The translations under genes and the position numbers were made by a program. Below the pieces are notes generated by a model that did not search any database, was not told the origin of the DNA, and saw nothing but the letters and a program-made list of their open reading frames with translations. Positions 4,962-61,825 of a stretch of DNA of 64,000 nucleotides are shown here, one piece after another. The stretch spans positions 134,168,001 through 134,232,000 of the forward strand of contig NC_043000.1 in the NCBI RefSeq assembly GCF_006345805.1. The letters run 5' to 3'. This DNA is from Octopus sinensis (taxonomy: Eukaryota). Position 1 is the stretch's first letter, and each line of letters begins with the position of its first letter.

Positions 4962-5234
4962 TTGGTCAGTGCTAGAGTCGGAATGCATTCGATTAAACTT
5001 CATATTGGGGTCAACTCCAGCCACAGAATGCTCTGGAGGTACATTCATAATGGCACCTCCACCGTGCCGTTGTTGTTGTTGGTGGTGGGGATGATGTTGT
5101 TGGTGCTGCTGCTGCTGCTGCTGTTGATGATGTTGTTGTTGTTGTTGCTGCTGTAGTGGTTGTTGCTGTTGTTGTTGTTGTTGTTGCTGTTGTTGGGATC
5201 CACCTTTCAGAAGGTGAACATCAGGATAACCAAT
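4962..5234 (-). CDS. Internal coding exon (273 nt, phase 0/0) of an unidentified gene. Encodes IGYPDVHLLKGGS-(Gln/His-rich tract)-RHGGGAIMNVPPEHSVAGVDPNMKFNRMHSDSSTDQ
   Basis: On the minus strand a long T tract plus CAG acceptor (AG at 5236-5235) precedes ATT GGT TAT. The exon ends GAC CAA|GTAAGT (GT at 4961-4960). Its length is a multiple of 3, it is open, GC-richer than its flanks, and has mixed CAA/CAG/CAT codons. Confidence 0.85.
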
Positions 5235-9790: not shown

Positions 9791-11200
9791 CATCATCATT
9801 TAATGTCTGTTGGTCATGCTGGCATAGGTTGGACTGTTTCACTGGGCTGGTAGGCTGGATGGCTGCACCAGACTCAGTCTTATTTGGCATGGTTTTCTAC
9901 GGGCGGATGCCCTTCATAAAGCCAACCACTCTGGGAGTGTAATTGGTGTTTTTATGTGCCACCAGCACAAGTGCCATTTGTGTGACAGGATGCATTTACA
10001 TGCCACTTGCACAGGTGCCAATTTGCATGACACTAGTATCTGCCATGACTGTGATTTTGCTCAGTTTGATGGATCTTCTTCTCAAGCACAATATAATGCC
10101 AAAGGTCTTGGTCATTGCCTCCATTAGGCCCAACACTCAAGAGGAACTCAGCCAGTTTGCCTCCATGAGACCCAACATTCAAAAGGTGTTCCTTATGTGC
10201 CACCTTATGTGCACTTGGCTTGATGAGTCCTCTGAAGCACAGCATATTGCCAAAGGTCTCAGTCACCAGTCATTGCCTCTGTAAGACTCAAAGTTCAAAG
10301 ACCATGCTTCACCACCTCGTCCCAGGTCTTCCTGGATCTACCTCCACCACAGGTTCCCTCCACAGTTAGAGATCAACACTTCTTTACACAGCTGTCCTCA
10401 TCCATACATATCACATGACCATACCAGCACAGTCGTCTCTCTTGCACACCACATCTGATACCTCTTGTGCCTAACTTTTCTCTCAAGATACTTACACTCT
10501 GATGAACATGCACACTGACATTGCACATCCAGCAAAGCATACTAGTTTTATTTCTTTCAAGCCTACGCATGTTCTCAGCTGTCATAACCCATGTTTCACT
10601 GCCATGCAGCATAGCTGTTTGCACGCAGGCATCAAACAAACTGTCTTTCACTCTGAGAGAGCGGTCCTTTGTTGCCAGCAGGGGTAGAAGCTCTCTGAAC
10701 TTGCCCAGCCTAATCTTATTCTCACAGCTACGCTCCTGGAGTATCCACCTCCACTACTAATTTTGTCACCTAGATAACGAAAGTTATTTACTACCTCTAG
10801 CTTGCTTCCCTGGCAGTTGATAGAGTCTATTTTCTGCACATTTTCAGCATTTATTGTACCTGTGCACCTTCCACAAACAAAAGTTAGTTTCCTTGTTAAC
10901 CTTCCTCTGCTGTTGCTGCACCTTTTATGCGTCCAATGCTTATACTGGGTGCATTTTATGGGGTTTCTACCTACACATTTTCTACAGATTGAGCAGGGCC
11001 ATCTACCTGAAGGGATTTGTGATTTGTCTGCCTTCCTACTTACTATGACTTTGGTTTTTGCTAGTTAACTCTAAGGCCCTTTGAGTCTAGACCTTGCTTC
11101 CATACCTTGGACTTCTTCTCTAGCTCAGTAAAATCACCATCACAACCACAAAGCAGAAATTTCACCTGATCTCATGAACATGCTGTTGTTCATGGGATAA
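9791..11200 (-). mobile_element. 5'-truncated RTE-clade LINE: C-terminal RT/thumb region plus 3' UTR and (GAT)n tail, frameshifted
   Basis: ORF track peptides ...KLEVVNNFRYLGDKISSGGG... and ...FDACVQTAMLHGSETW...RRLERN...VQERRLCWYGHV are hallmark RTE ORF2 C-terminal motifs (YLG, YGSETW, RLxWxGHV). Confidence 0.9.
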
Positions 11201-14200
11201 ATGAATTTATTGTCCAAACAGACAGTTAAACGCTATATTTCTACTTCCAAATAATATAGAATGCATCTACAGTTTGAAATTATTCCAACAGTTTATTTAA
11301 CTACAATACACTGAACAATGTATATTCCACAAGATTTCGTAGTTCAGTATCTGACAGAAAGCAACCCCAAATCTGCTGAAACTAAATTTCTACAAGGATT
11401 ACCAGATATTAATTCAGTGGGGATTAAAAGGAAAAAAATATGAAATTAAATCAAAAGTTTCTCTATGAGAAGCATAACATGAAACTGAAGTCATTTATGT
11501 CAACAATACAAGCTACATGCATTAAATATATTCTAGCAAATAATACCAATGATCCCAAAAATATCTCCAGGGATAAAAATTCCCATCAGATAAAGAAAAA
11601 GTATCTCAAATCAATAAAACCGACAATCTATTAAGAGAAAAATCCAATGTCAGTCAAACATTGAAAATAAAACGGAGTGCTTCTACGAAAATGAAAAAAG
11701 GAATATAGGACACCAGGGTTACAGAAAACAAAAATTCATGTTAAGGTTTTTGACAGACTGACAAAAGAAGCAGCTTAAGGGAATTCCAAAAAAGACATTA
11801 AGGGAAAAGGTGCATTTACTACAGATCCTCACAAAGTAAGTTAATACTACATGAACATTTCAGTGTTCCCTGTAACTAACTGTACACATTCAAAATAGCT
11901 ATGCTGGTTCTCAAAATTGCAACTTTTCATAAAGCAAGAAGTAGCCGCCAGTTACACTGATATAAAAGACGTAATATTTACAATAGATAAAATGTGGAGG
12001 AGTGCAGTAACAGTCACTGATAGTTTATCTTTTACCTCTTACTAGTTTCAGTCATTAGACTGCAGCCATGCTGGGGCACTACCTTGAAGAATTTAGTTGA
12101 ACAAATCAATCAAAGTACTAATTTTTTTAAACCTGGTACTTACTTTATCAGTTTTCTTTGCTGAACTGCTAAGTTACAGGGGACATAAACACACCAATAA
12201 CAGCTGTCAAGTAGTGGTGAGGGACAAACATACAATGAGCTTTTTTCAATTTCCAACCGCCAAATCTACTCACAAGGCTTTGATTGGCCCAATGATAAAG
12301 AAGACACTTGCCCAAAGTGCCATACAGAGGGACTGAACCCATGTGGTTGAGAAGCAAGCTTTTTTACTATAGCCAGGTCTGCTCCTATAGTTTCCTGACT
12401 ATAGGTGCAGGCATCCTGTTAGTAAGTGGTACTTAGCATGGTTTCCATCCAGATAGACCCTCCTTCACAGATTTGCTGCAATTTTTCAGCTTGCTATAAA
12501 AACAGTAGCTGAAGACATCAACAAATGTATTGTATATCTGGGGTGAAAGGCAAAGCTGACCTCAGCAGAATTTGAACTCAGAATGTAAAGACAGACAAAA
12601 TACTGCTAAGCATTTCGCTCAGCATGCTAACATTTCTGCCAGCTCACTGCCTTTAAGCTAAATAGATATTGGCAGGAACAGTAAAAGAGAATAATAGACC
12701 GGCTTAAAATTGTTTGTCTCAATTTTTTTTATATGTATTTGTCTTTTGCATGCACTTGGAATGCCAAACATAATACTGCTTTTGCACCATTTTCAAAATG
12801 GACTTTGTCTATTATTCTCATACTTGAATCATGATTTTTTTATTCACATCTTGAGAGTATTCATATATATATATTCACATACCCATAAGGAAACTCGACA
12901 GTGACTAAGAAATTTGGCCAACTGATGCCTTTGTCAGACTACCTGATAAAACTAATAGTCAGAGAAAGTTCAAAGTCACTGTCAGCCTTTTCTTTGTAAA
13001 AATAAATTCCATGTGATGATGATGATCACTTAAATGTATTCATTAAAATTTCAATTAACAATTGTTTTTCTATAGTATACGTAAACACAAATTATACATA
13101 TATCTTTCTTTCTTTTGCTTAATGTTCAATTTTCCCTGCTAGCAGGAGTTTGGATGGAGATTTAATTGAAACAGGATTTTATGGCTGGGTGCTCTTCCTG
13201 TCACAAACCCTTACTTGTTTTTCCAGATAAGGGGTTTCTTTATTCTGAAAGTTTTTGAAAGTGCAGAGTAGCAAATCAAAGTACCAAAAAGAAATGTATC
13301 TAAAAAGAAAGCAGTGATAAGCATAATATAAACATTCATGCACACATCTACAATAGACTTCCTGCAGTTCCCTTCTACCAACTTTCTTTATGCAGCATTG
13401 GTTAGCTGGAGTCTATAGTAGCAGGCTTTTGCCCTAGGTGTTGTGCAATAGAGCTCAATCTGAAACCACACTGGTGCAGAGTGAACTTAACATAGCCATG
13501 CACCCCCTCCAAACACACACACACAATTACAAGTAGCAAATCACTTAGGCAATTTTAACAGTACTATTTATCCATTTGAAAATCAACAACTAATTCAAAA
13601 ATTGTAAATGTATGTAAGCTTTCAACACTCTGACCTTCTTACAGATATTACAAAACAATTGATAGTATGAGAGATGGTACTGAAAAGGTTTAAAACACCT
13701 TCGAAAAGTAATTCTACTTTTGTTAATGTTATTAATATCAAGACTGGTTAACTATCAATCAAGATAATTAAGTCAGAAACAAGTAGTATAAGGATATAAT
13801 TTGTAGAAAAGTGGGGTGTGTTCAATTTCTGTAATAATAAATTATTAAAAATATATTTTATTGATTGAACATTTTCTTTTAACCTGACGATGAGGATGCC
13901 GGTAGTCAGGGGAATTTAATTTGACCTAAGCAAAATATGACAATCACACACACAGATTATGAAAAATAAAAGATTATTGAAGCGATGATGCAGAAAGGAT
14001 AAAGACCATAGTTAGAAGTAAAATTTCATTATCATTAAATGATGAGAGTAAGAAAGGGAGGTAAGAAAATAAGTAAAAAGGAATATAAGTATGAAAACAG
14101 GATACGAAGGGTGGAAAGTGTTGATTAAAAACTATATAGAGATCACCATTATTATTATCATTTTTCATGTTTTTCTTACTGGCATGCATAGGCTTAGCTG

Positions 14201-15974
14201 GACAGGATCCAACAACTCAGAAGACTATATAAACTTTTAAACAATTATACACTTGCCAATAACCTGATGAGTCAACAAGAGGACTTCTCTGTAGTTGCTT
14301 AACCTACTAGAAATCACAGTCAAATCTATTTTAAATCACACTCTACCATATTTAAGAAAGAAAGAAAGAATATTTTAGATAATGTAGTCCTAGATTTTAA
14401 GAAGCTGTGATGGAAATGGCTGGAATGCCTTTGATCACAGATAGATCTGTTTGATGTTTGATCAGGACTGATACAGTTCAAGACTATATATATATATATA
14501 TGGGATTCGCAGTTTAGGCTTGTTGTAGTAGTAACAACAACAAATATCTTAATGTTAAGAATTAAAGCAAAACAATTGTTTGATAATAATATTAACCCAC
14601 CCACCCCAATTCAGTGTGAAAGTAATTGAGAAACAGTAAAAACGACTACAAGAATAAACAAAAGAATTTTGATCAAGACAGCTGTACAGTAATTTCAAAT
14701 TCTTTTGATCAACCTCTTAAAAGACTAAAATTTTAAAATTTTCAAGACAAAAATGTTATGTAATGGCTCCAACTTTAGACAAATGTTTTACAAGCTGAGA
14801 TTTTAATTTTCTGAAAATCACGAAGTTTGTTTATACTTCAAATAGTTCTATCACAGAGTAACTTCATGCGAAAAACAAGGCTATTAATGGGAATGTATAC
14901 ATTTTCTGTATCAAATATTTGATTACTATCTAAGAAAACATTTCAGAAAAGCTACTAAGAGGAAGTGAAATGATGTATATACTTCAGTCACCCAAACTGT
15001 TTTTCCTTAGCAAGAAAGGGGAGTGGTGAAAGAAAACTAAAACTACACACAAAGTAATACTAAACATATTTACAGTTATAAATGTTATTACCGATATTGA
15101 TTAATAACAAATTTATAAAACTTTTCGTGTATGTGTGCCTGTGTGTGCATATGTTTGTGTGTGTGTGTATATATATGTGTGTTTGTTGCTATAAAATTAA
15201 ATAAAAACTGGGTCATGAAATTCTAACATAATTAACTTATGGCTATTAATACTGAACAGATTTAAAGTGTAAACACATTACTTACCAGTCATTGTTCAAA
15301 ATTCATCTCTCTAAAACTACTTCCAATTTATTATCTTTGCTGCTCCAAATAGGTCACAAAAACAGTGGTCAGAATATCTCCATTGTTATTGTAATTATCA
15401 GTTAAGTACCCAGAAACTGCATATTGCTTCAGTTAAGCTGAAGCCAACAGCTAAAATGTTACAGCCAAAACAGTTAAAAATTTCTATTGCACTTTTAAAC
15501 ATTTTCCCATTTCAAATTGAAAGCTAAGAATTGATAAAAATCCAGATAAACTGTTGAATACTGAAACACGCAAATGTTTATAATTTTTTTTTCTTTTAAA
15601 TATAAGTAACACTAAGTTTATCTCTTCATAAAAGTAGCTTTTGAGGTCCAGTACAAGCTTTGACCATCCTAGAACCGCTTGACCAAACACACATCATGAA
15701 GAGCCTGTTAACATCCAACGTAAAAGTAGGCTTTCTCTGTCAAGACACTTCATGTTTCTTCCGTTTGACTCATTATTGGTGCAGCCAATAGACAATATTC
15801 CCCAAACAAGAGTCATTTCCTTGATTTAAAAAACTGAACTCTCATGGAAATGCCTACTTCAAACAAGCAGAAGGGCAGACAAAAAATAGACACACACACA
15901 CACACCACACACACACACACACTCAAACAAACTGCAAACATTTGCGTAGAGAGTGAAATGAGAGGAGACAGTGA

Positions 15975-16620
15975 ATGTGTAAGAGAGAGAGAGAGAGAGC
16001 GCGAGTGAGAGAGTGAATGAGAGTGAGTGAGAGAGAGTGCATGAGAAAGAGAGAGAGTATGAGACAGAGAGTGAATGAGAGAGTGCATGAAAGAGAGAGA
16101 ATGCATGAGTGAGAGAGAATGCATGGGTGAGAGAGAATGCATGGGTGAGAGAGAGTGAGTGAGTGTGAGTGAGTGATTGAGTGCATGAGTGAGAATGCAT
16201 GAGTGAGAGAGAGTGCATGAGTGTGATAGGGAGTGCATGAGTGAGAGAGAGTGAGTGAGTGACTGCATGAGTGTGAGAGAGAGTGCATGAGGGAGTGAGT
16301 GCATGAGGGAGTGAGTGGATGAGTGAGAGAGTGAGTGAGTGCACGAGTGAGACAGTGCATGAGTGAGAGTGTGCATGAGTGAGAGTGCATGAGTGAGAGT
16401 ATGCATGAGTGAGAGTATGCATGAGTGAGGGTGTGCAAGAGTGAGAGTGTGCATGAGTGAGAGTGTGCATGAGTGAGAGTGTGCATGAGTGAGAGTGTGC
16501 ATGAGTGAGAGTGTGCATGAGTGAGAGTGTGCATGAGTGAGAGTGTGCATGAGTGAGAGTGTGCATGAGTGAGAGTGTGCAAGAGTGAGAGTGTGCAAGA
16601 GTGAGAGTGTGCAAGAGCGA
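15975..16620. repeat. Minisatellite with 16-bp unit GTGAGAGTGTGCATGA, grading into (GA)n
   Basis: Homogeneous run ~16441-16600, increasingly degenerate leftwards. Confidence 0.9.
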
Positions 16621-18112
16621 GAGAGCTACAGAGAAAAGAGGAGAGAGAAAGTGAAGGACAGAGGAGGAGGGAGAGAGAAAGAAGAAAGAAAAGAGAAGTG
16701 AAGATGTAGTCATCATGTCTGAAAGAACACTTAGAAATAAGCGAGACACAATGAACCTTATTACCAGAATAATTTATATTGCTATGGTTACAAAAGAGGC
16801 ATTTTGTGAGTTAATATCTGATACTTCAGATTTTCATCCTCTTGTATATTGGATCTCAACAATTCATAAAAAAAAAAATAACATTTTGAAATGCATGCAC
16901 AGACACACGATTTACTGCACTTTGACACATATAGTGAGAGATGCCAAAGCAAAAGCCTCCAAAAAAAAACCTCTTGACGAATTTGTGGTTAGAAATAATA
17001 TCCAAATCACATGCTACTAACTGGAAAAAAGGAAGGGTATATTGGATAATGTGGTCTTAGGTCTCATTAAAATCACTGGATGCTTATGAGAGAAATGCAT
17101 CTGATCACAGATTAGTTCAATCAGGGTTGACTTTGGTTAAACAACAACATATAAGGAACAGATATAGATTGTAATACCTGTGCACATTAAGGACTTTTTT
17201 TTATATGAGAAGGACATATAATGTTAAACACATTTGTGTAACATGGGCATAATATATTAAAGGCACATTTTAGAAAAATCTGCAAGATAAGTGCAGTAAA
17301 ACATATTTTACTTTTTTTTTTATGAACCTACTTACAGATCATTCAGTTAAAGAACTGATTGCATGAAGAATTTTCCAGGAGAGATAGACACATTAAATTT
17401 TTACAGAATGCTCTAGTGGATATGGGAATACTGCATACAGATTTGTCTGAGGACATTGGTACACTGAATACAGACTGTTCTGGAATTCCCAAATACAGTA
17501 TATAATTATACTTAGATACACATTAGAAATAGTCCATTGGGACACACTGACACACTGCTATTGGTCATACTGGGAATCAGGAAAACAAAGTGCAGAAATG
17601 GGTGTACTAACCAGAGACTTAATATATAGTTATCAAAACACTTTGGGAGGCTTGCACCATACTACAAAACACAGCAGTTGAAACAAATATCCTTGAATTT
17701 AGAACTTTCTGGAAGATATGAACTTTTTTTTTTAATTAATATTTTATTAGAAAATATTGTTCTGGCAATTTTTGTTTCATTCATAGATTTGTAATTATTA
17801 CAGCTGAAAGATTTTCTCGTCACCAAACTTGAAGGACATGTATTCAAAGAAACCTGCAGCAAGACTTATCAGAACTCTCTAAGCTTGAGACTATTCTAAC
17901 AGGTTTTCAAATGAAAAGCCAAATTACAAGACTTCATGCACCACATTAAGTTAATTAGTAACTCAATCAAAAAGTACTGAAACATAAGATTTGAATGATT
18001 CAACTGCAGACCCTGAAATGGTTACTTTAAACTATCAAATCCAGTTTCATTGAAAGATATTGTGACTACACACACACACATTTACAATACATAACAACCA
18101 ATAAATACTGAC

Positions 18113-18188: not shown

Positions 18189-19629
18189 CTGAAAAAGAAA
18201 AGAAAAACTGATATGAAAATCTCATAAAACTTGCTTACGACAGACAAATGCTGTAATTTCTTGTAAAAGTTCATTGATTTTCTGACAACAAAGTAAATAA
18301 ACTGATTAGATTAGTCAACAAGGTCAATAAAACAGATAATCATCATAAAGAAAACTAGAAAAAGTGGCATGGTAATTGATCAGAACCAAGCAATGAGAAG
18401 GAATTCTTTCAAAATATCAAATATCTTTTGAGGAAAACTGTGTGTTTGAATATGCATGATTATAATATATATATATATATTTGTATTTATTATTGTAAGT
18501 TTGTGTGCATAGCCATAAAAATAGAAGTGGAAATGCAAACAAAATGTTTATTTAATCTTATGTGTATATAACAATGCTTATTTAGGTGTTTTTTCAAGGT
18601 TATTTATTTAATATATCATCATCATTTTATATTCCCTATCCCTATGTTTCACAGCATCTTGTTACTATCATTTGTCATCCAGCACACACAGCATCAGAGG
18701 AAACCACCAGTGCTGCATACTTTTTTCTTAAAAGTTCTCATCACCAATCACTTTACAACATGGACTTCTTATTCAAAGTTACTGACATCCTGGACAGGCT
18801 GCCTGCGATGCAGCCCACAAAATCTAGGTTTCCTGTGTCAAGTTCACTTTCTGCTTAACATACTTACCACAAACCCAGAAAGATACCCTTCCTACAAGTA
18901 ATCACTTTCTAATATGGACTGAGAATATTTTATCATGCAATCAACACTCGAGTTGTCTGCAGCAAGGATAAAGTCTTCCCTACCCTATTCTTCATAATAT
19001 CTAATGGTGAAACCAGTTAGCTGCTCTGGCAATGATCATGCTCGGATGGGGCTCTTAGCACTCCCCTAGCACAGATGCCAGTCATCGAATTTGAAATCGA
19101 AATCAAATTTGATGACTGGCATCCATACTAGTGGAGTGCTAAGAGCACCATCCGAGCGAGGTCATTGCCAGTGCTGCTGGACTGACTCCTGTGCAAGTGG
19201 CACTTAAAAAACATCTTGTGAGCATGGCCATTGCCAGTACCGTCTGACTGACCCCCATGCCAGTGGCATGTAAAAGCACCCACTACACTCTCGGAGTGGT
19301 TGGCATTAGGAAGGGCATCCAGCTGTAGAAACTCTGCCAGATCAAGATTGGAGCCTGGTGCAGTCATCTGGTTCACCTGTTCTCAGTCAAATCATCCAAC
19401 CCATGCTAGCATTGAAAGCAGACGTTAAACAATGATGATGAATACAGTACCCAAATAATCTCCAAAGCATCAGCACATATGCATATTCAGAGGTAGGGGA
19501 GAGAAACAAGCTGGCAGACACAGAAGAAAAAGGGAGACAACAGTAAATTGCTAAAAAGTAAACAAAGAATTCACATTTCCTTCAAACATACTGAACAAAC
19601 AGAAATCCAATTTCTGCCTTCAAATTTAA

Positions 19630-36644: not shown

Positions 36645-36840
36645 CCCTTTTGTTACTGTATTTCTGTTGAGATGATCTGTGTTTCTTTCAGTTACTTTAA
36701 ATATAAGAAAGAATTTAGTAAAATAACTTAGTTATCATTAAGCTAGTGTGTTAGGAACATAAATTGTGACTAAGGTTTGGTGGAAGATTTTAATTCACAA
36801 CTTATGAAAAAAAGACATTTGTATTCAGAACCAGAAAGGG
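36645..36840. mobile_element. piggyBac-type MITE, same family as 34176-34403, right end partly deleted
   Basis: TTAA|CCCTTTTGTTAC, same internal sequence, ends GAAAGGG. Confidence 0.75.
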
Positions 36841-36856
36841 TTGGCACATCTATTCA

Positions 36857-37055
36857 TTAACACCTTTTGTTACCACTGAGATCACCACTGGTTCCATGAT
36901 GCCAACTTCCTGTTTTTAAATGATCTAAAAGCCTTGCATCAAAATTTCATCTTCATTTATGTTCCAAACACCAGTTTAATGATGACAAAGTTATTTTACT
37001 AAATTCTTCATTATTTTCAACAGTTTCCACAGAAATATGATAACAAAAGAGTTTA
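36857..37055. mobile_element. Related piggyBac-type MITE subfamily in opposite orientation
   Basis: TTAACACCTTTTGTTACC ... GATAACAAAAGAGTTTAA. The internal block is the reverse complement of the neighbouring MITE's AAGAATTTAGTAAAATAACTT region. Confidence 0.65.
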
Positions 37056-45465: not shown

Positions 45466-45838
45466 TGTGGTAAGTAGCTTGCTTACCAACCTCATGGTTC
45501 CAGGTTCAGTCCCACTGCATGGCACCTTGGGCAAGTGTCTTCTACTATAGCCTCAGGCCGACCAAAGCCTTGTGAGTGGATTTGGTAGACGGAAACTGAA
45601 AGAAGCCCGTCGTATATATGTATATATATGTATGTGTGTGTGTGTGTTTGTCCTCCCAACATCACTTGACAACCAATGCTGGTGTGTTTACATCCCCGTA
45701 ACTTCGTGGTTCAGCAAAAGAGATCGATAGAATAAGTGCTAGGCTTACAAAGAATAAGTCCTGTGGTCGACTTGCTCAACTAAAAGCGGTGCTCCAGCAA
45801 GGCCACAGTCAAATGACTGAAACAAGTAAAAGAGAGTA
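45466..45838 (+). mobile_element. tRNA-head SINE, family B, with internal (TA)/(TG) microsatellite
   Basis: GGTTCAGTCCCAC B-box-like motif, then gcaagtgtcttctactatagcc...ggtagacggaaactgaaagaagcc, 3' end gtcaaatgactgaaacaagtaaaag. Further copies at ~2385-2580(-), 12030-12390(-), 13350-13505(-), 19965-20225(-), 33465-33835(-), 51030-51310(-). Confidence 0.85.
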
Positions 45839-46475
45839 TCTACTTCAAAGATATGTAACATTAGATATGAACGAAGATTTTGCCTTTACAACTATGTCAT
45901 CATACTAGCTACTAAAATCTGCTGGCAATTGTTTTGTTTTAACTGTGATTATTAGCAAATAAAAGAAAGAGAAAAAAAATACATGAAGCAGTTATCTGAA
46001 TTACTTTATACAGTAGGTTATTGTAGTTATTTTCCTTAAGATATGATCAAACAGTGAAGATGAGAAACTTAAAAATCAACAAATCAGCACAGATAAGAGC
46101 TTTCTAAAAGCTTGTTTTCCTCTTATAATATCTCAAACTGATAAAAAACAGAAAAACATTACATGATATACCTCACTGTAATCAGCCAATAAGCTAATGA
46201 ACAATTTAAATGAAGCTAGGTCAGAGACGTAAATTATCGTAATTATACATAATTCAATAACAACAGTGTGATGTTATTGTTAATCTAAGGAGATCTGTGA
46301 GGTCTTAATTTGCTTTAAATATATTTTGCAAAAATTATTGGAATAGTAAATAAAAGTTTGCTAGAGAGCATTAAAGCATGCTGGACCTTTTCATTTAAAG
46401 ATTACAATACTCATTATTGTTCAACATCTGTTTTCTATGCGGGCATGGACTGGACAATTACTATTTGTATGTATG

Positions 46476-49523: not shown

Positions 49524-52500
49524 ATTTAAACCATTAAATTGCAAATAGAAATTTCAAAGAGGCTAGTAATCTTAAAAAATAAATTTTGAAAAAAAGCAAG
49601 CTAAAATTTAGGATAACTGCTAGATAATTCGCTGCACTAGTAACAATCCTCAGATACATTTAAGAAAAGGGAACTGTGGCATTCATATCTTCCCAAGTCT
49701 AAGTTACATATGTGAGATGGCTACAGCTACAAGTACAGAAAACTTAACAGCACAGAAGGTATTACATCATGTTACTAAAGCCAGCTTCCTCTACTTGCCT
49801 AAAACTCATTACTTAATCCTTAAAAAAATTATAACTACTGCAAGTTTGTGCTGATGCCATGTAAAAGCACCCAGTATACTCTGTGGTGTGGTTGGCATTA
49901 GAAAGGGCATCTGGTCATAGAAACCATGCCAAAATAGACAATTGGGACATGGGTAGCTCCCTTGCTGGCCAGCTCCCATCAAACCATCAAGTCCATGCCA
50001 GCATGAAAATGTGGATGTTAAATGATGATAATGTTGTAGCAATATTATTTCATTAAATACAATTTGTAAATCATCTCTAGTTTAGTTTATTCATTATATC
50101 CTTACAAAAAGAGAAAAAAAAAAAAAAAAAAGAATGATTTCCAAAATTTGTCTTTCTCATCCTTTTTAACCAATACCACCCAAATCCACCATCATTTAAA
50201 TCCTTTAAAATGTTTTAGCCCGAAGGCCGCGGCCATGCTGGGGCACTACCAACTTTTCCATGCTTGTATGGGTCTGCCTCAAAAAATTTTCTCAGTTTTA
50301 TTGAGTGAAATAAAACTATCATTTTCAGAGAATCTACAAGCAAATATTTTAATTTTTGCACAAGAAAACCAAATACTTTTATTTATTTTTTAAAAACTAG
50401 TAATTAAAAAGGAAGCAAGAACTAATAAAACAAAATAAAAACTAAAAGCTGATTTTTAGTGTTTGAAGTTTATCTGACAACTAACTCAACAATAGAACAT
50501 ACTGGAAGAGCCGAGCCTAATGGATTAAAATAATAATAATAATAATACTTTAAAGAAAAAGAAAACCTGTCTGTAAAAACAAGTACCTTGTTTTTGTTAT
50601 ATAGTGCAAGTGAAGTTAGATAAGTTTCAGAAGAAATGTAACAAAGGTGGCTTTCCAAGCCCACACCATATTGTTCATTGTTCCACAATTTATCTTGTCA
50701 ACTTGCCAGCTCCTTAGATTAGCAAGCTGCTCATTCAAGTTGCTAATTCCACAATTTAAATCAACATTGTTGTCTTTCAAGGTGCATATCAAAATTGGCA
50801 CCAAATACATCTCCAGCATTATATAAAATGATTTCCTGAAATATCTTTTTTAATTATAACTGGGTTTTTTTGTGTTTTTTTTCAGTCACTTATTTTTATT
50901 TATTTTTTGAAAAAGTTTTTTTTAAGAAATGAAAGTAACAACTTGGAAAGATCAGAGAACAAACACGCAAAGAGTAATTTTGTTTTAAATAAATATACTT
51001 TTGATAAATTGGCAACAATATTCTTTTATCTTTTACTCGTTTCAATCATTGGACTGCAGCCATACTGGGACACTGCCTTGAAGAAAGGTTTTAATGGAAC
51101 AAATCAACCACAGTATTTTTTTTTTATTTTTTAAAGTCTGGTACTTATTCTATCAGTCTTTTTTGCTGAACTGTTAAGTTACAAGTACATAAATGAATAT
51201 TGGCTGTTTAAAAGTATGTTTGTGTGGGGACAAACAGACACAAACACATACACACACAATGGGCTTCTATACAGTTTCCATCTACCCAATTCACTCACAG
51301 GGTATTGGTTGAAGCTCAGAAGTACAAGCTAATGAAACACTCCTCAATTATTCTACATCCAAATTTCAAGTAGTAAAAATCTATATCTATTTTGTAAACA
51401 TTTACAGATGAGCCTGGGCAGAGTTAAAGAGCTTTGCTAAAACAAAGCCCAGCACTCAATCAACAGTCACCATTCAACTAGTAGGACTCCTATCTGTTGA
51501 CTTAATGAGTTCTAGCTTGCCATATAAACATGAATATTGATGTCACCACTTGCACAAAAGTGATGATGTCAACATTCCTTGCCAATATTGTGACTGGTCA
51601 CTCTGCATTTTTGAACTCTGGAATAAAAATGCTTGAGCAACATCCTGCTTCAAACAACTCCTTGTCTATATGATACTTCCATGGAAGAAAAACATTGAAT
51701 AATTGGCTGAGCTTCATCACAAACTCATTTTTCTCCCTTGTAAATCATATTTAAGAAAATGTTATTGCTACGTAAGAAAAATCATTGCTGCTCATTTGCC
51801 ATAAATTATTTTGTTCTTTGTGTTAATGACTAAATTAATCGAGAAAATTATTTCCTGCACACTTTCTCGGTACATAACATACAAGTCATAAAAGACTGGT
51901 ATAATTACAGAAATATTCAAATGCAATTCTACTTAGAATGTTGAAGATTATAATGATTAAATAGTTAGGATTCTTGTCCACAGAATAATCTTGCAGAAAT
52001 AAATTAAATTAGCACACCCATGATGAGCCAATAACTTTATATACTGCTTAGTTACAATTTACATTATTAAACCTAATATAACAGAGTCCTCTAAAATAAA
52101 CAGCTATTTATAGGAAATGGTAAGCATTTCATTTTCATTAACAGTCATTACAAATGAATGTAAACTTCGTTACTAGGAACTGCAAAATAGCGGTATATTG
52201 AAATAACATTTTTGTCATTAGCAACTGATACATACATACACTTTATCAAAAAAACAAAACAAAAAATGTTTCATCATCATCATTGTTTAACGTCCATTTT
52301 CCATGCTAGCATGGGTTGGACGGTTCGACTGGGGTCTGGGAGGCCAGGAGGCTGCACCAGGCTCCAGTCTGATCTGGCAGTGTTTCTACAGCTGGATACC
52401 CTTCCTAACACCAGCCACTCCGTGCCACAGCTACGATCAGTTGGTGCAACAGCTACAATCAGTTGGTGCTTTTTACATGCCACCAGCACTGTAGCCAGTC

Positions 52501-52624
52501 AAGGCAGCGCTGGCATAGGCCACGCTCGGATGGTGCTTTTTATGTGCCACCGGCACAGGTATCACAACTACAATTTCTATTTGATATTTATTTTGATGTT
52601 GATGTACTTGACTCAATAGGTCTC

Positions 52625-53031
52625 CTCAAGCACAGCAGGTCACCCTACAATCCAAGGTAGAGCACAGCAGATCGTCCTACAATCCAAGGTGCTTTTGAAT
52701 GGGCTAAATCAACTTCTATAAAATTTCAACTCAAATAGCTACAGAATATCGAACTCACATTTTTTACCAACCTAGCAAATTTTTACTTTTATAAAGTATT
52801 CAGTTTCATCATCATCATCATCGTTTAACATCCACTTTTGATGATGATGAAACTGAATACTTTATAAAAGTAAAAATTTGCTAGGTTGGTAAAAAATGTG
52901 AGTTCGATATTCTGTAGCTATTTGAGTTGAAATTTTATAGAAGTTGATTTAGCTCATTCAAAAGCACCTTGGATTGTAGGACGATCTGCTGTGCTCTACC
53001 TTGGATTGTAGGGTGACCTGCTGTGCTTGAG
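52625..53031. repeat. Long inverted repeat: two 193-bp arms, one mismatch, 21-nt loop
   Basis: 52625-52817 is the reverse complement of 52839-53031. The only difference is G52702 opposite T52954. Confidence 0.95.
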
Positions 53032-53261
53032 CAGTATTATCACTTATCAAAGTAACCTCCATGACTATTAAGAAGCAAGGTTATAAAACACTTAAAAAAT
53101 TCAATTCAGGATTAAAACATCTTGACTATATGACCTCCTAAGTAAACTTATGGCATAGATAAGATAATTTTTAACACTCTTCACAATATGTGGGCAAAAC
53201 ATAAATTTTTGTTATGGTATGTGAATAAATCCTGTTTCAAAACTGTTTTCATATGATTTTA

Positions 53262-53760
53262 TCCATTTCAGTCATTTGACTGCAGCCATGCTTGAGCACC
53301 GCCTTTAGTCAAATTCAACTCCAGGACACCGACATCAGTTGTCAAGCGATGTGGGAAGGGTGGCCCACCAAACACGCACACACATATATATGGCAGGCTT
53401 CTTTCAGTTTCTATCTACCAGTTACCGATACTTGCCTAAAACTCATTACTTAATCATTAAAAAAATTATTATTATTACTGTAAGTTTGTGCTGGTGCCAC
53501 GTAAAAGCACCCAGTATACTCTGTGGTGTGGTTGGCATTAGAAAGGACATTTGGTCGTAGAAACCATGCAAAAGTAGACAATTGGGACATGGGTAGCTCC
53601 CCTGCTGGCCAGCTTCCATCAAGCGATCCAATCCATGTATTAGATTTGCCGGGGCTAGTTCATTATCCCAATCTAAGGCTATAGTAAAAGATACACAGTG
53701 AGACTGAACCCGGAACCATGTGGTTGGTAAGCAAGCTACTTGTCACGCAGCCACTCCTGC
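53262..53760 (-). mobile_element. SINE family B interrupted by a ~250-bp insertion
   Basis: The family B sequence stops at ...ctatctacca (~53420) and resumes at ...aaggctatagta (~53675). Confidence 0.75.
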
Positions 53761-57810: not shown

Positions 57811-58263
57811 GAGGCATCTTACTTTGGATGTTTAGTTAGAATCTTTCACTTATTTTTGTAACTAAAGCCTGCACAAGCAAACATCACAATTACTTATCTC
57901 TCTACACCACCACGCCACCATCCGGCCTCAAAACAATTTGAGGTATTCTATCTATGTAAGAAACAAATGTTTATTCTGCTATTGTTGAATTTTCCTTCAT
58001 ACTAATTAATTTCATAGACTATAATCAACAAAATACGAGTGTGACAAGTCAAAAGCAATTAAGTGTTCGGATAAAAACACGTAAATATTACGGTCACTAC
58101 ACTGAACTTAGGCCGTTCTCAAAAGTACACAAGGTATTACGCCAGTGAAATTAGTGACGCGGGGGGGGGGGGGCTAGGTGGCGGAGGTAAAGAATACGTA
58201 CACCACCCGTTTTCAGCGTAACAAAAACCCTAACCACCTTTACTTTCGCCGCCTAGGTTTTTA

Positions 58264-58684
58264 GGCGATCTTTCGTCTCTAGTAGACCTTTCCGTCGATT
58301 TCCGTAAAAAGATTTTTTTTTTTTTACATATGGGCTTGCGGGAACTTTTGAAGTAATATACATACATACACATACACCGAGTAAAAAATTTCAGTTATCT
58401 CTTTCTTTCACACATTACTCTGTCTCTTCACACACACTAACAGAAGCACTTCACTTACACAACATACTGTCTGTCTCCCACACCCCATCAAACACACACA
58501 CACACACGTACATCAATGCTTCCCCCTGGACGGTAACTTCAAAAGAACTTCCCTCGTCATACAATCGCTTTCTCTTAGTCTCTTTCGCTCTCATTACTTC
58601 AAAAGTTCCCGCAAGCCCATATGTAAAAAAAAAAAAATTTTTACGGAAATCGACGGAAAGGTCTACTAGAGACGAAAGATTGCC
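58264..58684. mobile_element. MITE/foldback-like element with ~90-bp near-perfect TIRs
   Basis: 58268-58357 is the reverse complement of 58593-58680 except within the T/A run. ~235-bp CA-rich interior. No TSD recognised. Confidence 0.75.
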
Positions 58685-60532
58685 GGTTTTTAATACGAAA
58701 GGTATGAAGAACTACAGAAAACTTGAATACCATGGTGTCTTCGTAATCATTCCAATTAGTAAACCATACAAGAGGGAAAACAAAATATTTCTTACGCAGG
58801 CATAATGCCTATGATTTTAGAGGAAGAGAAAAAATGGGAATACTAAGCTTAATTTTCCCCAAAATATTAACGACATAAAGGGAATTGGCACAAAGTGGGT
58901 ATCGAATTCACGTCCCGGACTCAACTTGCTTAATAGCTTTATGTTTATCTCCCAGCATTCATTTTATTGCAGGAAAATCATTTATTTTCCCGCAATAATT
59001 ATATATAGATGTCAATGTCACTAGTTTGTGTTTGTATAAAGACTCATCTACGCCCCCGTGTCTCTCGAGCACTCGCGCGCATCATAATGTTGCCAATCCT
59101 AACGAACGTGATAAAATGACAAAAGAATGCTTATAAAAATTGATATTAAGAAAATTTCTAGACTATAATATAATAAGACAGAGATAGATAGATAGACAGA
59201 TAAATATTTCGTGAAAAGGATGGCTCACGATGTGGAACTGAAATCAACGTTGCATAGCAGCGTTCAACGATTAAGCAATATTGCTATAAAAAAATAATAA
59301 AATAAAATATCTAACACAGTTTTCCCTAAGTCACATTTCATTACCATTAAACATAAATATATGCAGACATAAAAATGCTTGTGTGTGTGATACAAATAGT
59401 AAATCCTTGAGGTTAATTATTCAGAGACCATTCTATGAAAATTAAGCTTAGAATTAACATATATAATGTAGTGAGCATGAAAATCTAATTAGAAATATTT
59501 AAATGAGGAAAAGACCTTAGCTCAGTGACTAATATTATTTTAATCATTTAAGCAAGCATGAGAAACAACCTAAGGGTATGTTTCACTCTTATTAGACCTC
59601 CTCAATGGAACCTATTTTAGCATAGCTCTGAAGCAGAGTTGAGAGAATCACTGAATATTACAAATACGTGTATGTATGTATGTAACAATCTAAGACAAAC
59701 CAATATGGAAATTCTATGGTCACTGGATCAGACAGATTATAACAGCCAAATTTCTTACAAATCACATTTTGCCCACATAAAGAGGAAGTATACATTAGGA
59801 AATGAAGTCATAGATATATAAAATAAGACAGTAATAGCTGGATTTTATAACACATCAGAAGTAAAGTCTTCTGTGAGTTCATTGGATCTGGGAGAAATTG
59901 CAGTTAAATTTTCCTCAAATCACATGACTCTTAAAAACAGAAGGGTACAGTGAATAATGTAACTCTAGAAATACTAATCTTGAAAAAGATACAGGTTGGT
60001 TTCAACCAGAACACCTTGGATCATATATCTGCTGAATCAAGACTGATCTATGGCTTAACAAAACTACTAAGGTTTATAGCCATGTCATCATTGCCTTTTA
60101 ACCATTTTATGTTATATTTTTGTTGAAACGGTCATCCATAAACAATCTTGTCTGGAGTTGTGCCTTGGAGGGTAACTTTCTAGGTGCAATCCCATGGTCA
60201 TTCATCCCCAAAGGGGGTCCTTAAAGGATGTACTTAAGTTGATTTAAATGATGGGATCATCCTCACAATTGAATGGCATTGTATCTATGTAAGGGATCAT
60301 CATTTAAGAGTAAGTACAGAGTAAGTACAGAAGCTTTTATTTCGGTTAGACTTGAACATAGTGAGAATTAAATTATTGTGTTTGGAACATATATGACCAA
60401 GAAATTTTGATGAGTGGTTTTAATGTAGATCCTTTTAAAACAGGAAGTTTTTATCAAATCATCACGGGCAGTCTCAGATGGGTTCATATCAAAAGTGGTA
60501 ACATCTGCTTTCCATCTTGGCATGGTCTGGAC

Positions 60533-61294: not shown

Positions 61295-61825
61295 CATCAT
61301 CATCATCATCGTTTAACGTCCACTTTCCATGCTAGCATGCGTTGGACGATTTGGCTGAGGACTGGCGAACCAGATGGCTGCACCAGGTTTCAATCTTGAT
61401 CTGGCAGAATTTCTACAGCTGGATGCCCTTCCTAACGCCAACCACTCCGAGAGTGTAGTGGGTGCTTTTACATGCCACTGGCACGGGGCCAGTCAGGCGA
61501 TACTAGCAATGACCTCGCTCGAATCTTTTACACCTGCCACCAGCACAGGTGCCAGTAAGGCGATGCTGGTAACGAGCATGCTCGAATGGTGTCTTTTACA
61601 TGCCACCAGCACGGAGGCCAGATAGCTGCTCTGGCAACGATCATGCTCGGATGGTGCTCTTAATACCCTACAAGCACGGGGCTCGAGTGCCAGTAAGGCG
61701 ACACTGGTAACAATCACACTCGAATGGTGTCTTTTAAGTGCCACTGGCACGGAAGCCAGTTAGCCGCTCTGTCAATGATCACACTCGTATGGTACTCTTT
61801 GCACCCCGCTAGCACGGATGCCACT
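61295..61825 (-). mobile_element. RTE-type 3' end copy with expanded tandem subrepeat array
   Basis: catcatcatcatcgtttaacgtcc... followed by about 5-6 diverged units of the form tgccac..gcac..gccag..cactcgaatggtgtctttta. Confidence 0.8.

What the first reader, a model, noticed from the sequence alone, without database searches (positions are those of the whole stretch)
52625..53031. 193-bp perfect foldback hairpin created at a (CAT)n repeat: candidate hpRNA/endo-siRNA or ADAR substrate
Seen: arms 52625-52817 and 52839-53031 match at 192 of 193 positions with a 21-nt loop. It is not a MITE. The arm is a mosaic of an RTE-element end with a 33-bp internal duplication, ~110 bp of apparently unique AT-rich DNA, and (CAT)n. 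The loop is the first bases of a truncated catcatcgtttaacatccacttt RTE tail, and the turn occurs at CAT/GAT microhomology. Inference: a recent foldback (template-switch) inversion. The single mismatch is G.U on plus RNA (still paired) and A.C on minus RNA (the preferred ADAR context). If transcribed, it gives ~190 bp of dsRNA, a substrate for Dicer or ADAR. In DNA it could extrude a cruciform.
Basis: partly seen in the sequence, partly recalled or inferred. Interest (0 to 1): 0.7.

Follow-up and report, generated by a model that had tools for sequence, protein, structure and literature searches.

The report
Snap-back palindrome at an aborted RTE insertion
A real, near-perfect 193-bp inverted duplication in an octopus-like genome, most likely a scar left when a retrotransposon insertion aborted and the new DNA end folded back and copied its own flank; it could make double-stranded RNA if transcribed, but this kind of structure and this way of making it are already known.

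Summary
Arms 52625-52817 and 52839-53031 match at 192 of 193 positions, with a 21-nt loop and one G/T mismatch (52702/52954). The predicted fold is about -354 kcal/mol on either strand.

It is not a MITE. It has no target-site duplication, and the arm core has no other copy in the window.

The (CAT)n is not a genomic microsatellite. It is the 3' tail of a 32-33-nt fragment ("B") of an RTE-family retroelement that has 13 tails in this window. The turn lies where B stops, 16 nt past the CAT tract, with at most 1 nt of microhomology.

The only other complex short-loop hairpin in the 64 kb (19019-19178; 76-nt arms by the repeat finder, about 83 aligned; 86%) also sits where an RTE-family copy ends.

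Read in the direction of first-strand synthesis, both look like the "snap-back" 5' junctions described for R2 and LINE-1 insertions. The cDNA 3' end folds back and copies the cDNA, or here mostly the resected upstream target DNA. This reading is inferred, not shown.

A role as an hpRNA, endo-siRNA or ADAR substrate is untested. Octopus genomes are reported to hold very many such dsRNA-forming loci. An assembly artefact cannot be excluded without reads, but it looks unlikely.

The parts
52271..52690 (-). RTE-family copy A. The sense strand is minus, and its (ATG)n tail reads as (CAT)4 at 52271-52283 on the plus strand. Its distal part runs into the left arm.
   Evidence: BLAST and alignment to six other copies in the window. 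Weak collinear similarity to copies c9780 and c6206rc crosses 52625.
52625..52817 (.). Left, parental arm. It holds the distal end of copy A with 2 x 32-bp tandem units (52629-52692), anonymous AT-rich DNA (52691-52805) and the first four TCA units of B's tail (52806-52817).
   Evidence: The core 52691-52808 has no other copy in the window apart from the right arm.
52807..52838 (-). RTE-family fragment B: a (CAT)5 tail plus 16 nt of the element's 3'-terminal sequence (GTTTAACATCCACTTT), cut off at the turn.
   Evidence: It matches the tail pattern with 0 mismatches. There are 13 matches in the window against 0.02 expected. It is 97% identical over 32 nt to the copy at 61295. The junction with the target looks like those of the other 12 copies.
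52818..52838 (.). Loop of 21 nt. It is the part of B that is not copied back.
52839..53031 (.). Right arm: the inverted copy of 52625-52817. It has (TGA)4 against (TCA)5 on the left.
   Evidence: It joins B's head in a way no family copy does, so it is the derived arm.
52702..52702 (.). The single arm-to-arm mismatch (G here, T at 52954).
53032..53035 (.). Outer junction. CAGT abuts the right arm, and CAGT at 52801-52804 lies 2 nt before B's tail. This is a possible short target-site duplication, and the evidence is weak.
   Evidence: Read directly. A 4-nt match with a flexible offset is not significant.
19019..19178 (-). A second, older foldback of the same kind. Arms are 76 nt by the repeat finder (about 83 nt by alignment), 86% complementary, with a loop of 0-8 nt. 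It sits where RTE-family copy c19437(-) stops being collinear with the family.
   Evidence: Collinearity with copy c6186(-) ends at 19092, while c6186 continues.

Best explanation
The palindrome is a 'snap-back' 5' junction of an aborted RTE-family retrotransposition.

Inferred sequence of events: the element's endonuclease nicked the plus strand just left of 52806. Target-primed reverse transcription then made only about 33 nt of cDNA, namely the (CAT)5 tail and GTTTAACATCCACTTT. The opposite strand of the left-hand end was cut and resected 5'->3' for about 200 nt. The free cDNA 3' end folded back with essentially no homology, leaving a 21-nt loop. A polymerase, either the RT or a host enzyme, copied the exposed plus strand back as far as 52625. 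This new end was then joined to the right-hand side of the target at 53031|53032.

The result is a young inverted duplication of host DNA, probably neutral. Its likely consequences are passive. If RNA polymerase reads through it, it forms about 190 bp of near-perfect dsRNA, which in an octopus would most probably be hyper-edited by ADAR. As DNA it is a potential cruciform or fragile site.

Shown: the structure, the identity of B, the position of the turn at B's end, and the second example. Inferred: the order of events, the resection, and which enzyme did the copying.
For: (1) Structure and boundaries are confirmed.
(2) B is a bona fide family tail with the family's usual short (CAT)2-5 tail abutting the target.
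(3) The left arm plus loop forms an uninterrupted target-tail-head sequence. The right arm is joined to the head at exactly the point where family homology stops.
(4) No remainder of B in the same orientation lies to the right of 53031 within 3.5 kb. This is expected if B was never longer. A break in an old full-length B would need an extra deletion.
(5) Whole-window scans find only two complex hairpins with loops of 40 nt or less. Both lie at the truncated end of one of the 13 RTE-family copies. By my rough, post hoc arithmetic the chance is about (13 x 21 / 64000)^2, or 2e-5.
(7) Precedent: induced LINE-1 gives target-site inverted duplications and foldbacks that are attributed to 5' resection plus self-annealing of the cDNA 3' end (PMC11702581).
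(8) RTE families are reported to be recently active in Octopus vulgaris (PMC13282606).
Against: There is no empty-site allele or outgroup, so the ancestral state is unknown.

The candidate target-site duplication is only CAGT, with a 2-nt offset.

The other family copies in the window are old (about 83-85% pairwise identity). B's 16-nt head differs from the majority sequence at both CpG sites. Those states recur in other copies, so B cannot be dated. B could therefore be old while the foldback is young (0.5% arm divergence).

Copying 181 nt of flanking duplex requires resection or strand displacement, and nothing in the sequence records that.

Two cases in one window is a small, post hoc sample.
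Confidence: 0.5

Rival explanations
1. The foldback is generic and unconnected with retrotransposition. An old RTE-family copy B suffered a spontaneous double-strand break or replication-fork stall 16 nt into its body. The resected 3' end, or the nascent strand, folded back and was extended (foldback priming, MMBIR or intra-fork template switch). It was then rejoined with loss of the rest of B.
For: Foldback-templated inverted insertions at DSBs are well documented, and they depend on Pol delta plus NHEJ or alt-EJ (PMC11724301; snap-back mode of Pol theta, PMC4912351, listed). The family copies in the window look old, while the arms differ by only 0.5%.
Against: This needs a break that happens to fall within the first about 33 nt of a copy, and also a deletion of exactly the rest of B or more. 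It does not explain why the only other complex short-loop hairpin in the window also sits at an RTE-copy end. The inverted insertions described in yeast are mostly 5-34 bp and use microhomology. Here the copy is 193 bp with at most 1 nt of microhomology.
Confidence: 0.27
2. The structure is an assembly or sequencing artefact, such as a chimeric foldback read or a mis-join, and is not in the genome.
For: Perfect palindromes are a known product of chimeric long reads and amplification. No reads were available to me. Exact-protein look-ups of three ORFs next to the hairpin found no independent assembly.
Against: The arms differ at one position, so they were resolved separately. The loop is genomic retroelement sequence, not adapter sequence. 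Both outer junctions lie in ordinary, unique, N-free sequence. The arms are only 193 bp rather than read-length, and I know read-length palindromes to be the usual form of missed-adapter artefacts (own knowledge). An older, decayed structure of the same design exists at 19019-19178, and no artefact would produce 14% diverged arms.
Confidence: 0.1
3. It is a functional hairpin-RNA (hpRNA, endo-siRNA) or regulated ADAR-substrate locus kept by selection. This concerns function, so it can hold together with any of the origins above.
For: The RNA fold is extremely stable on both strands. Octopus shows very strong hyper-editing at long near-perfect dsRNAs (PMC5625713). A minus-strand exon in the window leaves open an intronic position, in which case the mismatch would be A.C.
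Against: There is no evidence of transcription. The arms are retroelement debris plus anonymous AT-rich DNA with no detectable target elsewhere in the window. Their RTE-derived part is too diverged from other copies to guide silencing. The near-identity of the arms is explained by youth, since the older analogue decayed to 86%. About 0.44% of random 50-mers in octopus lie in such structures, so the prior that any one of them is functional is low. The Rfam hits are generic long-hairpin matches below the gathering scores.
Confidence: 0.04
4. It is a MITE or foldback-type DNA transposon with long terminal inverted repeats.
For: It has long inverted repeats around a short centre.
Against: No target-site duplication abuts the arms (…GGTCTC | arms | CAGTAT…). 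The arms are a mosaic of another element's end, anonymous DNA and a retroelement tail. There is no other copy in 64 kb, and an arm 24-mer has no hit in metagenome contigs (a weak test). A true MITE in the same window (58264-58684) shows what one looks like, with a perfect 8-bp duplication GGTTTTTA.
Confidence: 0.02

Closest known systems
'Snap-back' 5' junctions of non-LTR retrotransposon insertions (R2 protein-mediated TPRT in human cells; Zhang et al. 2024, PMC11371274; PMC11331408)
   Same: The order of parts is the same: target primer strand, then tail-primed cDNA, then a turn, then the reverse complement of what precedes, then a join to the other side of the target. [quoted passage not shown] The window shows both forms: 19019-19178 on the cDNA, and 52625-53031 mostly on target DNA.
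   Different: Those are experimental, somatic, site-specific R2 events. This one would be a natural germline RTE-clade event with an extremely short cDNA (about 33 nt), an unusually long copy of flanking host DNA (181 nt) and no demonstrable target-site duplication.
LINE-1-induced target-site inverted duplications and foldback junctions (Mendez-Dorantes et al. 2024 preprint, PMC11702581; PCAWG L1 fold-back inversions, PMC7058536)
   Same: The proposed mechanism is the same: an endonuclease/TPRT-generated end, 5' resection, then self-annealing of the cDNA 3' end to give an inverted duplication with reverse-transcribed sequence at the turn.
   Different: Those foldbacks are mostly kilobase- to megabase-scale. 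They are resolved by replication into dicentric chromosomes or copy-number changes in cancer or induced cells. This one is a local 193-bp event, closed by rejoining to the other target end and inherited.
[quoted passage not shown] 2024, PMC11724301; Pol theta snap-back, PMC4912351)
   Same: [quoted passage not shown]
   Different: Those are typically 5-34 bp and use microhomology next to the break. Here the copy is 193 bp, microhomology is at most 1 nt, and a retroelement tail sits at the turn.
L1 5' inversion by twin priming (own knowledge: Ostertag and Kazazian 2001)
   Same: It is a rearranged 5' end of a 5'-truncated LINE insertion that arises during integration.
   Different: Twin priming inverts a more 5' segment of the element itself and does not give a short-loop palindrome. 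Here the inverted segment is a duplicate of the adjacent sequence, mostly host DNA.
Inverted-repeat dsRNA substrates of ADAR (inverted Alu pairs; octopus hyper-edited loci, Porath et al. 2017, PMC5625713) and Drosophila hpRNA loci (e.g. PMC10317233)
   Same: It would form a long, nearly perfect intramolecular dsRNA if transcribed.
   Different: Typical ADAR substrates are two separate insertions of one repeat. hpRNAs are inverted duplications of a target gene and produce Dicer-2-dependent siRNAs. Neither transcription, nor editing, nor small RNAs, nor a target is shown here.

Membership tests
Snap-back 5' junction of a non-LTR (RTE-clade) retrotransposon insertion | A bona fide element 3' end (tail plus 3'-terminal sequence) abuts target DNA on the primer side. 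| tested here: met
   B matches the tail pattern with 0 mismatches. There are 13 matches against 0.02 expected, and the junction looks like those of the other 12 copies.
Snap-back 5' junction of a non-LTR (RTE-clade) retrotransposon insertion | Right after the last element-templated base, the sequence becomes the reverse complement of the preceding cDNA or nearby target strand. | tested here: met
   Family homology ends at 52838 and the right arm starts at 52839. The same holds at 19092-19103 for the second case.
Snap-back 5' junction of a non-LTR (RTE-clade) retrotransposon insertion | The whole unit (cDNA plus snap-back copy) is one insertion, with a target-site duplication or an empty site lacking both parts. 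| tested here: inconclusive
   Only CAGT at 52801-52804 and 53032-35, with a 2-nt offset on the left. No allele or outgroup was available.
Snap-back 5' junction of a non-LTR (RTE-clade) retrotransposon insertion | The element belongs to an autonomous or RT-mobilised non-LTR lineage. | tested here: met
   The copy at 9791 continues into a LINE C-terminal ORF remnant (10214-10744, minus strand). That remnant is 71-78% identical to database ORFs, one of them an Octopus vulgaris hypothetical protein. Assignment to the RTE clade rests on tail type and my own knowledge. Pfam gave no domain hit.
MITE / foldback DNA transposon | A target-site duplication flanks the terminal inverted repeats. | tested here: not met
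   The flanks …GGTCTC and CAGTAT… share nothing at either boundary definition.
MITE / foldback DNA transposon | Multiple dispersed copies. | tested here: not met
   No other copy of the arm core in 64 kb. The whole genome could not be tested. A 24-mer has no hit in metagenome contigs, but that collection holds almost no cephalopod DNA.
hpRNA / endo-siRNA locus | Transcribed, with Dicer-dependent small RNAs of about 21 nt from the arms. | not testable with these tools
   No expression data were available.
hpRNA / endo-siRNA locus | Arms complementary to a target gene or an active element. | tested here: inconclusive
   No match elsewhere in the window. The RTE-derived 66 nt is only weakly similar to other copies.
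ADAR hyper-editing substrate (long intramolecular dsRNA) | A long, nearly perfect duplex within one transcript. | tested here: inconclusive
   The duplex is confirmed. Whether it lies in a transcript is unknown. One minus-strand exon lies at 4962-5233.
ADAR hyper-editing substrate (long intramolecular dsRNA) | Clustered A-to-G mismatches in RNA reads. | not testable with these tools
   No RNA-seq data were available.
Rfam miRNA/hairpin families | Score at or above the family's gathering threshold. | tested here: not met
   There are 0 hits at gathering scores. The sub-threshold hits to plant MIR models only reflect a long perfect stem.

The most novel reading that the evidence does not exclude
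Snap-back at aborted or 5'-truncated RTE/SINE insertions may be a recurrent, lineage-specific source of short-loop palindromes in octopus genomes, here seen at 2 of 13 family copies in 64 kb. It could help explain why octopus has an exceptionally high density of near-perfect dsRNA-forming loci and of ADAR hyper-editing. It could also supply raw material for new hairpin-RNA genes made of host flanking DNA.
Probability: 0.15. Interest if true: 0.6.

Novelty: new member of a known kind. Interest (0 to 1): 0.3.

Why it matters
As a single locus it matters little. It is a young and probably neutral structural scar, one of very many potential dsRNA-forming sites in an octopus-like genome.

Its value is as a clean natural example in a germline genome. 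It shows a retrotransposon integration intermediate that folded back and copied about 180 bp of host flanking DNA. That outcome has so far been described mainly in engineered R2 and induced LINE-1 systems.

If the pattern proved frequent genome-wide, it would link retroelement activity to the birth of palindromes, fragile sites and ADAR or Dicer substrates in cephalopods.

Tried and rejected
(1) Independent assemblies. Exact-product look-ups for three ORFs next to or overlapping the hairpin (52212-52619, 52266-52619, 52958-53062 minus) found nothing on record. Palindromic arms would in any case collapse in de Bruijn-graph contigs (own reasoning).

(2) Public DNA collections. An arm-specific 24-mer had 0 hits in metagenome contigs. 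As a control, the family-head 23-mer hit 4 contigs that share only the 60-bp head. The collection holds almost no cephalopod DNA, so this absence says nothing.

(3) Naming the gene. The exon query was swamped by polyQ. A Q-less construct found no candidates. The representative search returned only the same Logan fragment P0009 and two tandem-repeat artefacts. I therefore could not tell whether the hairpin is intronic.

(4) Pfam on ten ORFs gave nothing meaningful.

(5) Rfam gave nothing at gathering scores, and only generic stems at relaxed thresholds.

(6) Microhomology at the turn. I checked it, including slipped alignments in the CAT tract, and found at most 1 nt.

(7) Target-site duplications for copy A, for B plus the right arm, and for the second case. 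Only 4-6-nt matches with offsets turned up, and I do not rely on them.

(8) Twin priming. I rejected it because it does not yield a short-loop palindrome.

(9) Remainder of B displaced to the right. Not found. The only family fragment nearby (53486-53579) is inverted and diverged, so it is a separate insertion.

Full report
**1. Observation**

Arms 52625-52817 and 52839-53031 are complementary at 192 of 193 positions. The repeat finder extends them by 3 nt to 52622-53034 at the cost of one more mismatch. The loop is 52818-52838, TCATCGTTTAACATCCACTTT.

The one mismatch is G at 52702 opposite T at 52954. That is G.U in plus-strand RNA and A.C in minus-strand RNA.

Either strand folds into one uninterrupted stem. 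The MFE is -353.8 and -354.4 kcal/mol, against about -96 +/- 5 for dinucleotide shuffles (z = -49 and -44). Chance is excluded.

**2. Setting**

The window is 65% A+T, contains no N, and has no Rfam family at gathering score.

A LINE C-terminal ORF remnant at 10214-10744 (minus strand) is 71-78% identical to database ORFs. One of these is annotated as an Octopus vulgaris hypothetical protein. The DNA is therefore from an octopus or a close cephalopod relative.

One convincing exon lies on the minus strand at 4962-5233. It has a T-tract plus CAG acceptor and a GTAAGT donor, and it encodes a polyQ segment. A fragment from another cephalopod-like Logan contig, P0009, is 72% identical over its last 36 residues.

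I could not name the gene. I could not decide whether the hairpin, 47 kb upstream in that gene's orientation, lies in the same transcription unit.

**3. Anatomy of the arm**

A retroelement family is present 13 times in the window. As read on one strand, it begins with 2-5 CAT units followed by GTTTAACGTCCGCTTTCCATGCTAGCATGGGTTGGACG. The pattern search gave 13 matches against 0.02 expected.

The copy at 9791 runs on into the LINE ORF remnant. These are therefore 3' ends of an RTE-like LINE or of its non-autonomous derivatives, with the sense strand opposite to the CAT reading.

Copy A starts at 52271 and contains the family's roughly 67-bp internal repeats. Beyond 52565 the similarity to other copies becomes weak. 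Two copies (c9780, c6206rc) still align collinearly across the arm boundary to about 52635, but the scores are only about 2-3 SD above shuffles.

That stretch carries a 32-bp (not 33-bp) tandem duplication, 52629-52658 against 52661-52690, matching at 27 of 30 positions. Both arms carry the same differences between the two units. The tandem duplication is therefore much older than the foldback.

The core 52691-52805 has no other copy in the window.

The CAT tract at the inner end, together with the loop, is an intact tail plus the first 16 nt of a second family copy, B (52807-52838). It has 0 mismatches to the tail pattern and is 97% identical over 32 nt to the copy at 61295.

All 13 copies have the same kind of short CAT tail abutting unrelated target DNA. 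The (CAT)n is therefore the element's own tail, not a pre-existing microsatellite.

**4. Which arm is the original, and where the turn lies**

The left arm plus loop reads continuously as target DNA, then tail, then element head. The right arm, (TGA)4AAACTG…, is joined to …CCACTTT at exactly the base where family homology stops. The left arm is therefore parental and the right arm is the copy.

The turn lies 16 nt beyond the CAT tract. The bases that flank the loop are not complementary (52818 T and 52838 T). Even if B once carried a fourth T, as copy A does, microhomology would be at most 1 nt.

**5. Not a transposon of its own**

No direct repeat abuts the arms at either boundary definition. 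The arm is a mosaic, and it is single-copy in the window.

For contrast, a real MITE lies at 58264-58684. It has arms of about 95 nt and a perfect 8-bp duplication GGTTTTTA on both sides.

**6. The key extra observation**

I scanned the whole window for hairpins with loops of 40 nt or less, and for seeded inverted repeats with spacers up to 600 nt. Apart from (TA)n-type low complexity, only two short-loop hairpins exist. One is the finding. The other is 19019-19094/19103-19178, with 76-nt arms by the repeat finder (about 83 nt by alignment), 86% complementarity and a loop of 0-8 nt.

The second hairpin lies at the truncated end of RTE-family copy c19437(-). Its collinearity with copy c6186(-) ends at 19092, after …ATTTCGATTTCA. 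Copy c6186 continues with CTTGTCCCAACAGG…, whereas c19437 turns and runs back along itself. After the inverted stretch the sequence is unrelated.

So both complex short-loop palindromes in 64 kb begin at the last element-templated base of one of 13 RTE-family copies. A rough post hoc estimate of that coincidence is (13 x 21 / 64000)^2, about 2e-5 (my arithmetic).

**7. Mechanism**

Read in the direction of first-strand cDNA synthesis, both loci have the same order: target primer strand, tail-primed cDNA, turn, then the reverse complement of what precedes, then unrelated flank.

This is the 'snap-back' class of 5' junctions described for R2-protein TPRT insertions in human cells. [quoted passage not shown]

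For induced LINE-1, local inverted duplications and foldbacks at target sites are attributed to 5' resection of the endonuclease-generated end and self-annealing of the cDNA 3' end (PMC11702581; see also PMC7058536).

In the older case at 19 kb, the cDNA was about 340 nt long and the snap-back stayed within it. In the finding, the cDNA was only about 33 nt. Copying therefore ran through 12 nt of tail and then 181 nt of upstream host DNA. That requires the complementary strand to have been resected or displaced as far as 52625. The new end was then joined at 53031|53032.

There is no remainder of B in the same orientation to the right. This fits an insertion that was never longer. The only family fragment nearby, 53486-53579, is inverted and diverged, so it is a separate insertion.

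The steps (nick, short cDNA, resection, fold-back, fill-in, joining) are inferred from the final structure and from the cited precedents. None is shown directly.

**8. Age**

One difference in 193 bp is 0.5%. A recent repeat study equates a Jukes-Cantor distance of 0.09 with 25 My in O. vulgaris (PMC13282606). That is about 0.0036 per site per My per lineage. The arms would then have separated roughly 0.7 My ago (my arithmetic).

A count of one gives a very wide interval. The age could be zero if the single difference was a copying error by an error-prone polymerase. It could be underestimated if the arms undergo gene conversion.

The older analogue has decayed to 86%. Arm homogenisation is therefore not a rule in this genome.

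A weakness of the one-event model is that the other family copies here are old (about 83-85% pairwise identity). B's two differences from the majority head are at the CpG sites, and the same states recur in other copies. B itself therefore cannot be dated. Recent RTE activity is, however, reported in octopus.

**9. Rivals**

- **Generic break or fork template switch in an old B (about 0.27).** This needs the break to fall in the first about 33 nt of a copy and also a deletion of the rest of B. It leaves the second case unexplained. The foldback insertions known from yeast are mostly 5-34 bp and use microhomology (PMC11724301).
- **Assembly artefact (about 0.1).** This cannot be excluded without reads. 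It is disfavoured by the arm mismatch, the genomic loop sequence, the short arms embedded in unique flanks, and the decayed analogue.
- **MITE (about 0.02).** It fails the TSD and copy-number tests.
- **Selected hpRNA or ADAR locus (about 0.04 as a function).** See section 10.

**10. What it does**

There is no evidence of function. If it is transcribed, which is possible should it lie in an intron of the minus-strand gene, it would form about 190 bp of nearly perfect dsRNA.

In octopus, hyper-editing is exceptionally strong. About 4.4e-3 of random 50-mers lie in long near-perfect dsRNA-forming structures (PMC5625713). ADAR hyper-editing is therefore the most likely fate. By the same figure, this locus is one of very many.

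The preference of ADAR for A.C mismatches is established knowledge (my own, not checked here). The mismatch itself is simply a transition.

The hpRNA loci known from Drosophila are inverted duplications of target genes (for example PMC10317233). Here the arms have no detectable target.

As DNA, a 193-bp palindrome at 99.5% identity with a 21-bp spacer belongs to the class known to be fragile or cruciform-prone in yeast and under-represented among human Alu pairs (own knowledge). Its intactness fits a young age.

**11. Verdict**

The foldback origin holds, while the microhomology claim and the RNA role are not shown.

The best reading is a natural snap-back junction of an aborted RTE insertion, which makes it a new member of a known kind. 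Interest is modest. It would rise if a genome-wide census showed that such snap-backs are a common source of octopus dsRNA loci.

Noticed in passing
window 19019-19178 (minus-strand element): A second, older short-loop palindrome (76-nt arms by the repeat finder, about 83 nt by alignment; 86%; loop 0-8 nt). It sits exactly at the truncated end of an RTE-family copy and has the same design as the finding.
   Followed up: yes
window 58264-58684: A MITE-like element of 421 bp with terminal inverted repeats of about 95 nt and a perfect 8-bp target-site duplication GGTTTTTA (58256-58263 and 58685-58692). The duplication length suggests a hAT-type element.
   Followed up: partly
window 4962-5233 (minus strand): A conserved coding exon with a T-tract/CAG acceptor and a GTAAGT donor. 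It encodes a polyQ/H-rich segment followed by RHGGGAIMNVPPEHSVAGVDPNMKFNRMHSDSSTDQ. An orthologous fragment (P0009) comes from a Logan contig of another cephalopod-like sample. The gene was not identified.
   Followed up: partly
window 10214-10744 (minus strand), with frameshifted remnants up to about 11100: A C-terminal ORF remnant of the RTE-like LINE whose 3' end is the repeat family discussed here. It is 71-78% identical to database ORFs, including an Octopus vulgaris hypothetical protein. No Pfam domain was detected.
   Followed up: partly
window 53486-53579: A diverged (75-80%) fragment of the same or a related retroelement family, in the opposite orientation, 450 bp to the right of the hairpin. 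It is a separate insertion, not the missing part of copy B.
   Followed up: partly
window 53255-53330; similar pieces at 12046-12094, 4071-4094, 45788-45847, 51040-51063: An abundant short repeat with the core TTTCAGTCATTTGACTGCAGCCATGCTGG, probably a SINE, in both orientations. Several of the longer-spaced inverted pairs in the window are two such copies.
   Followed up: no
window 15813-16749: Long overlapping 'ORFs' rich in H/T/L/S on the minus strand. They are read from an imperfect tandem or microsatellite-like repeat and are not a gene.
   Followed up: no
window 36709-36749 / 36968-37008: A 41-nt inverted repeat pair with a 218-bp spacer. It may be another small TIR element.
   Followed up: no
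window 52422-52556: Inside copy A, the family's internal repeat units (about 67 bp, with a 22-bp sub-repeat) contain short self-complementary motifs (GTGCCA…TGGCAC, TGCCAGT…ACTGGCA). The number of units varies between copies.
   Followed up: no
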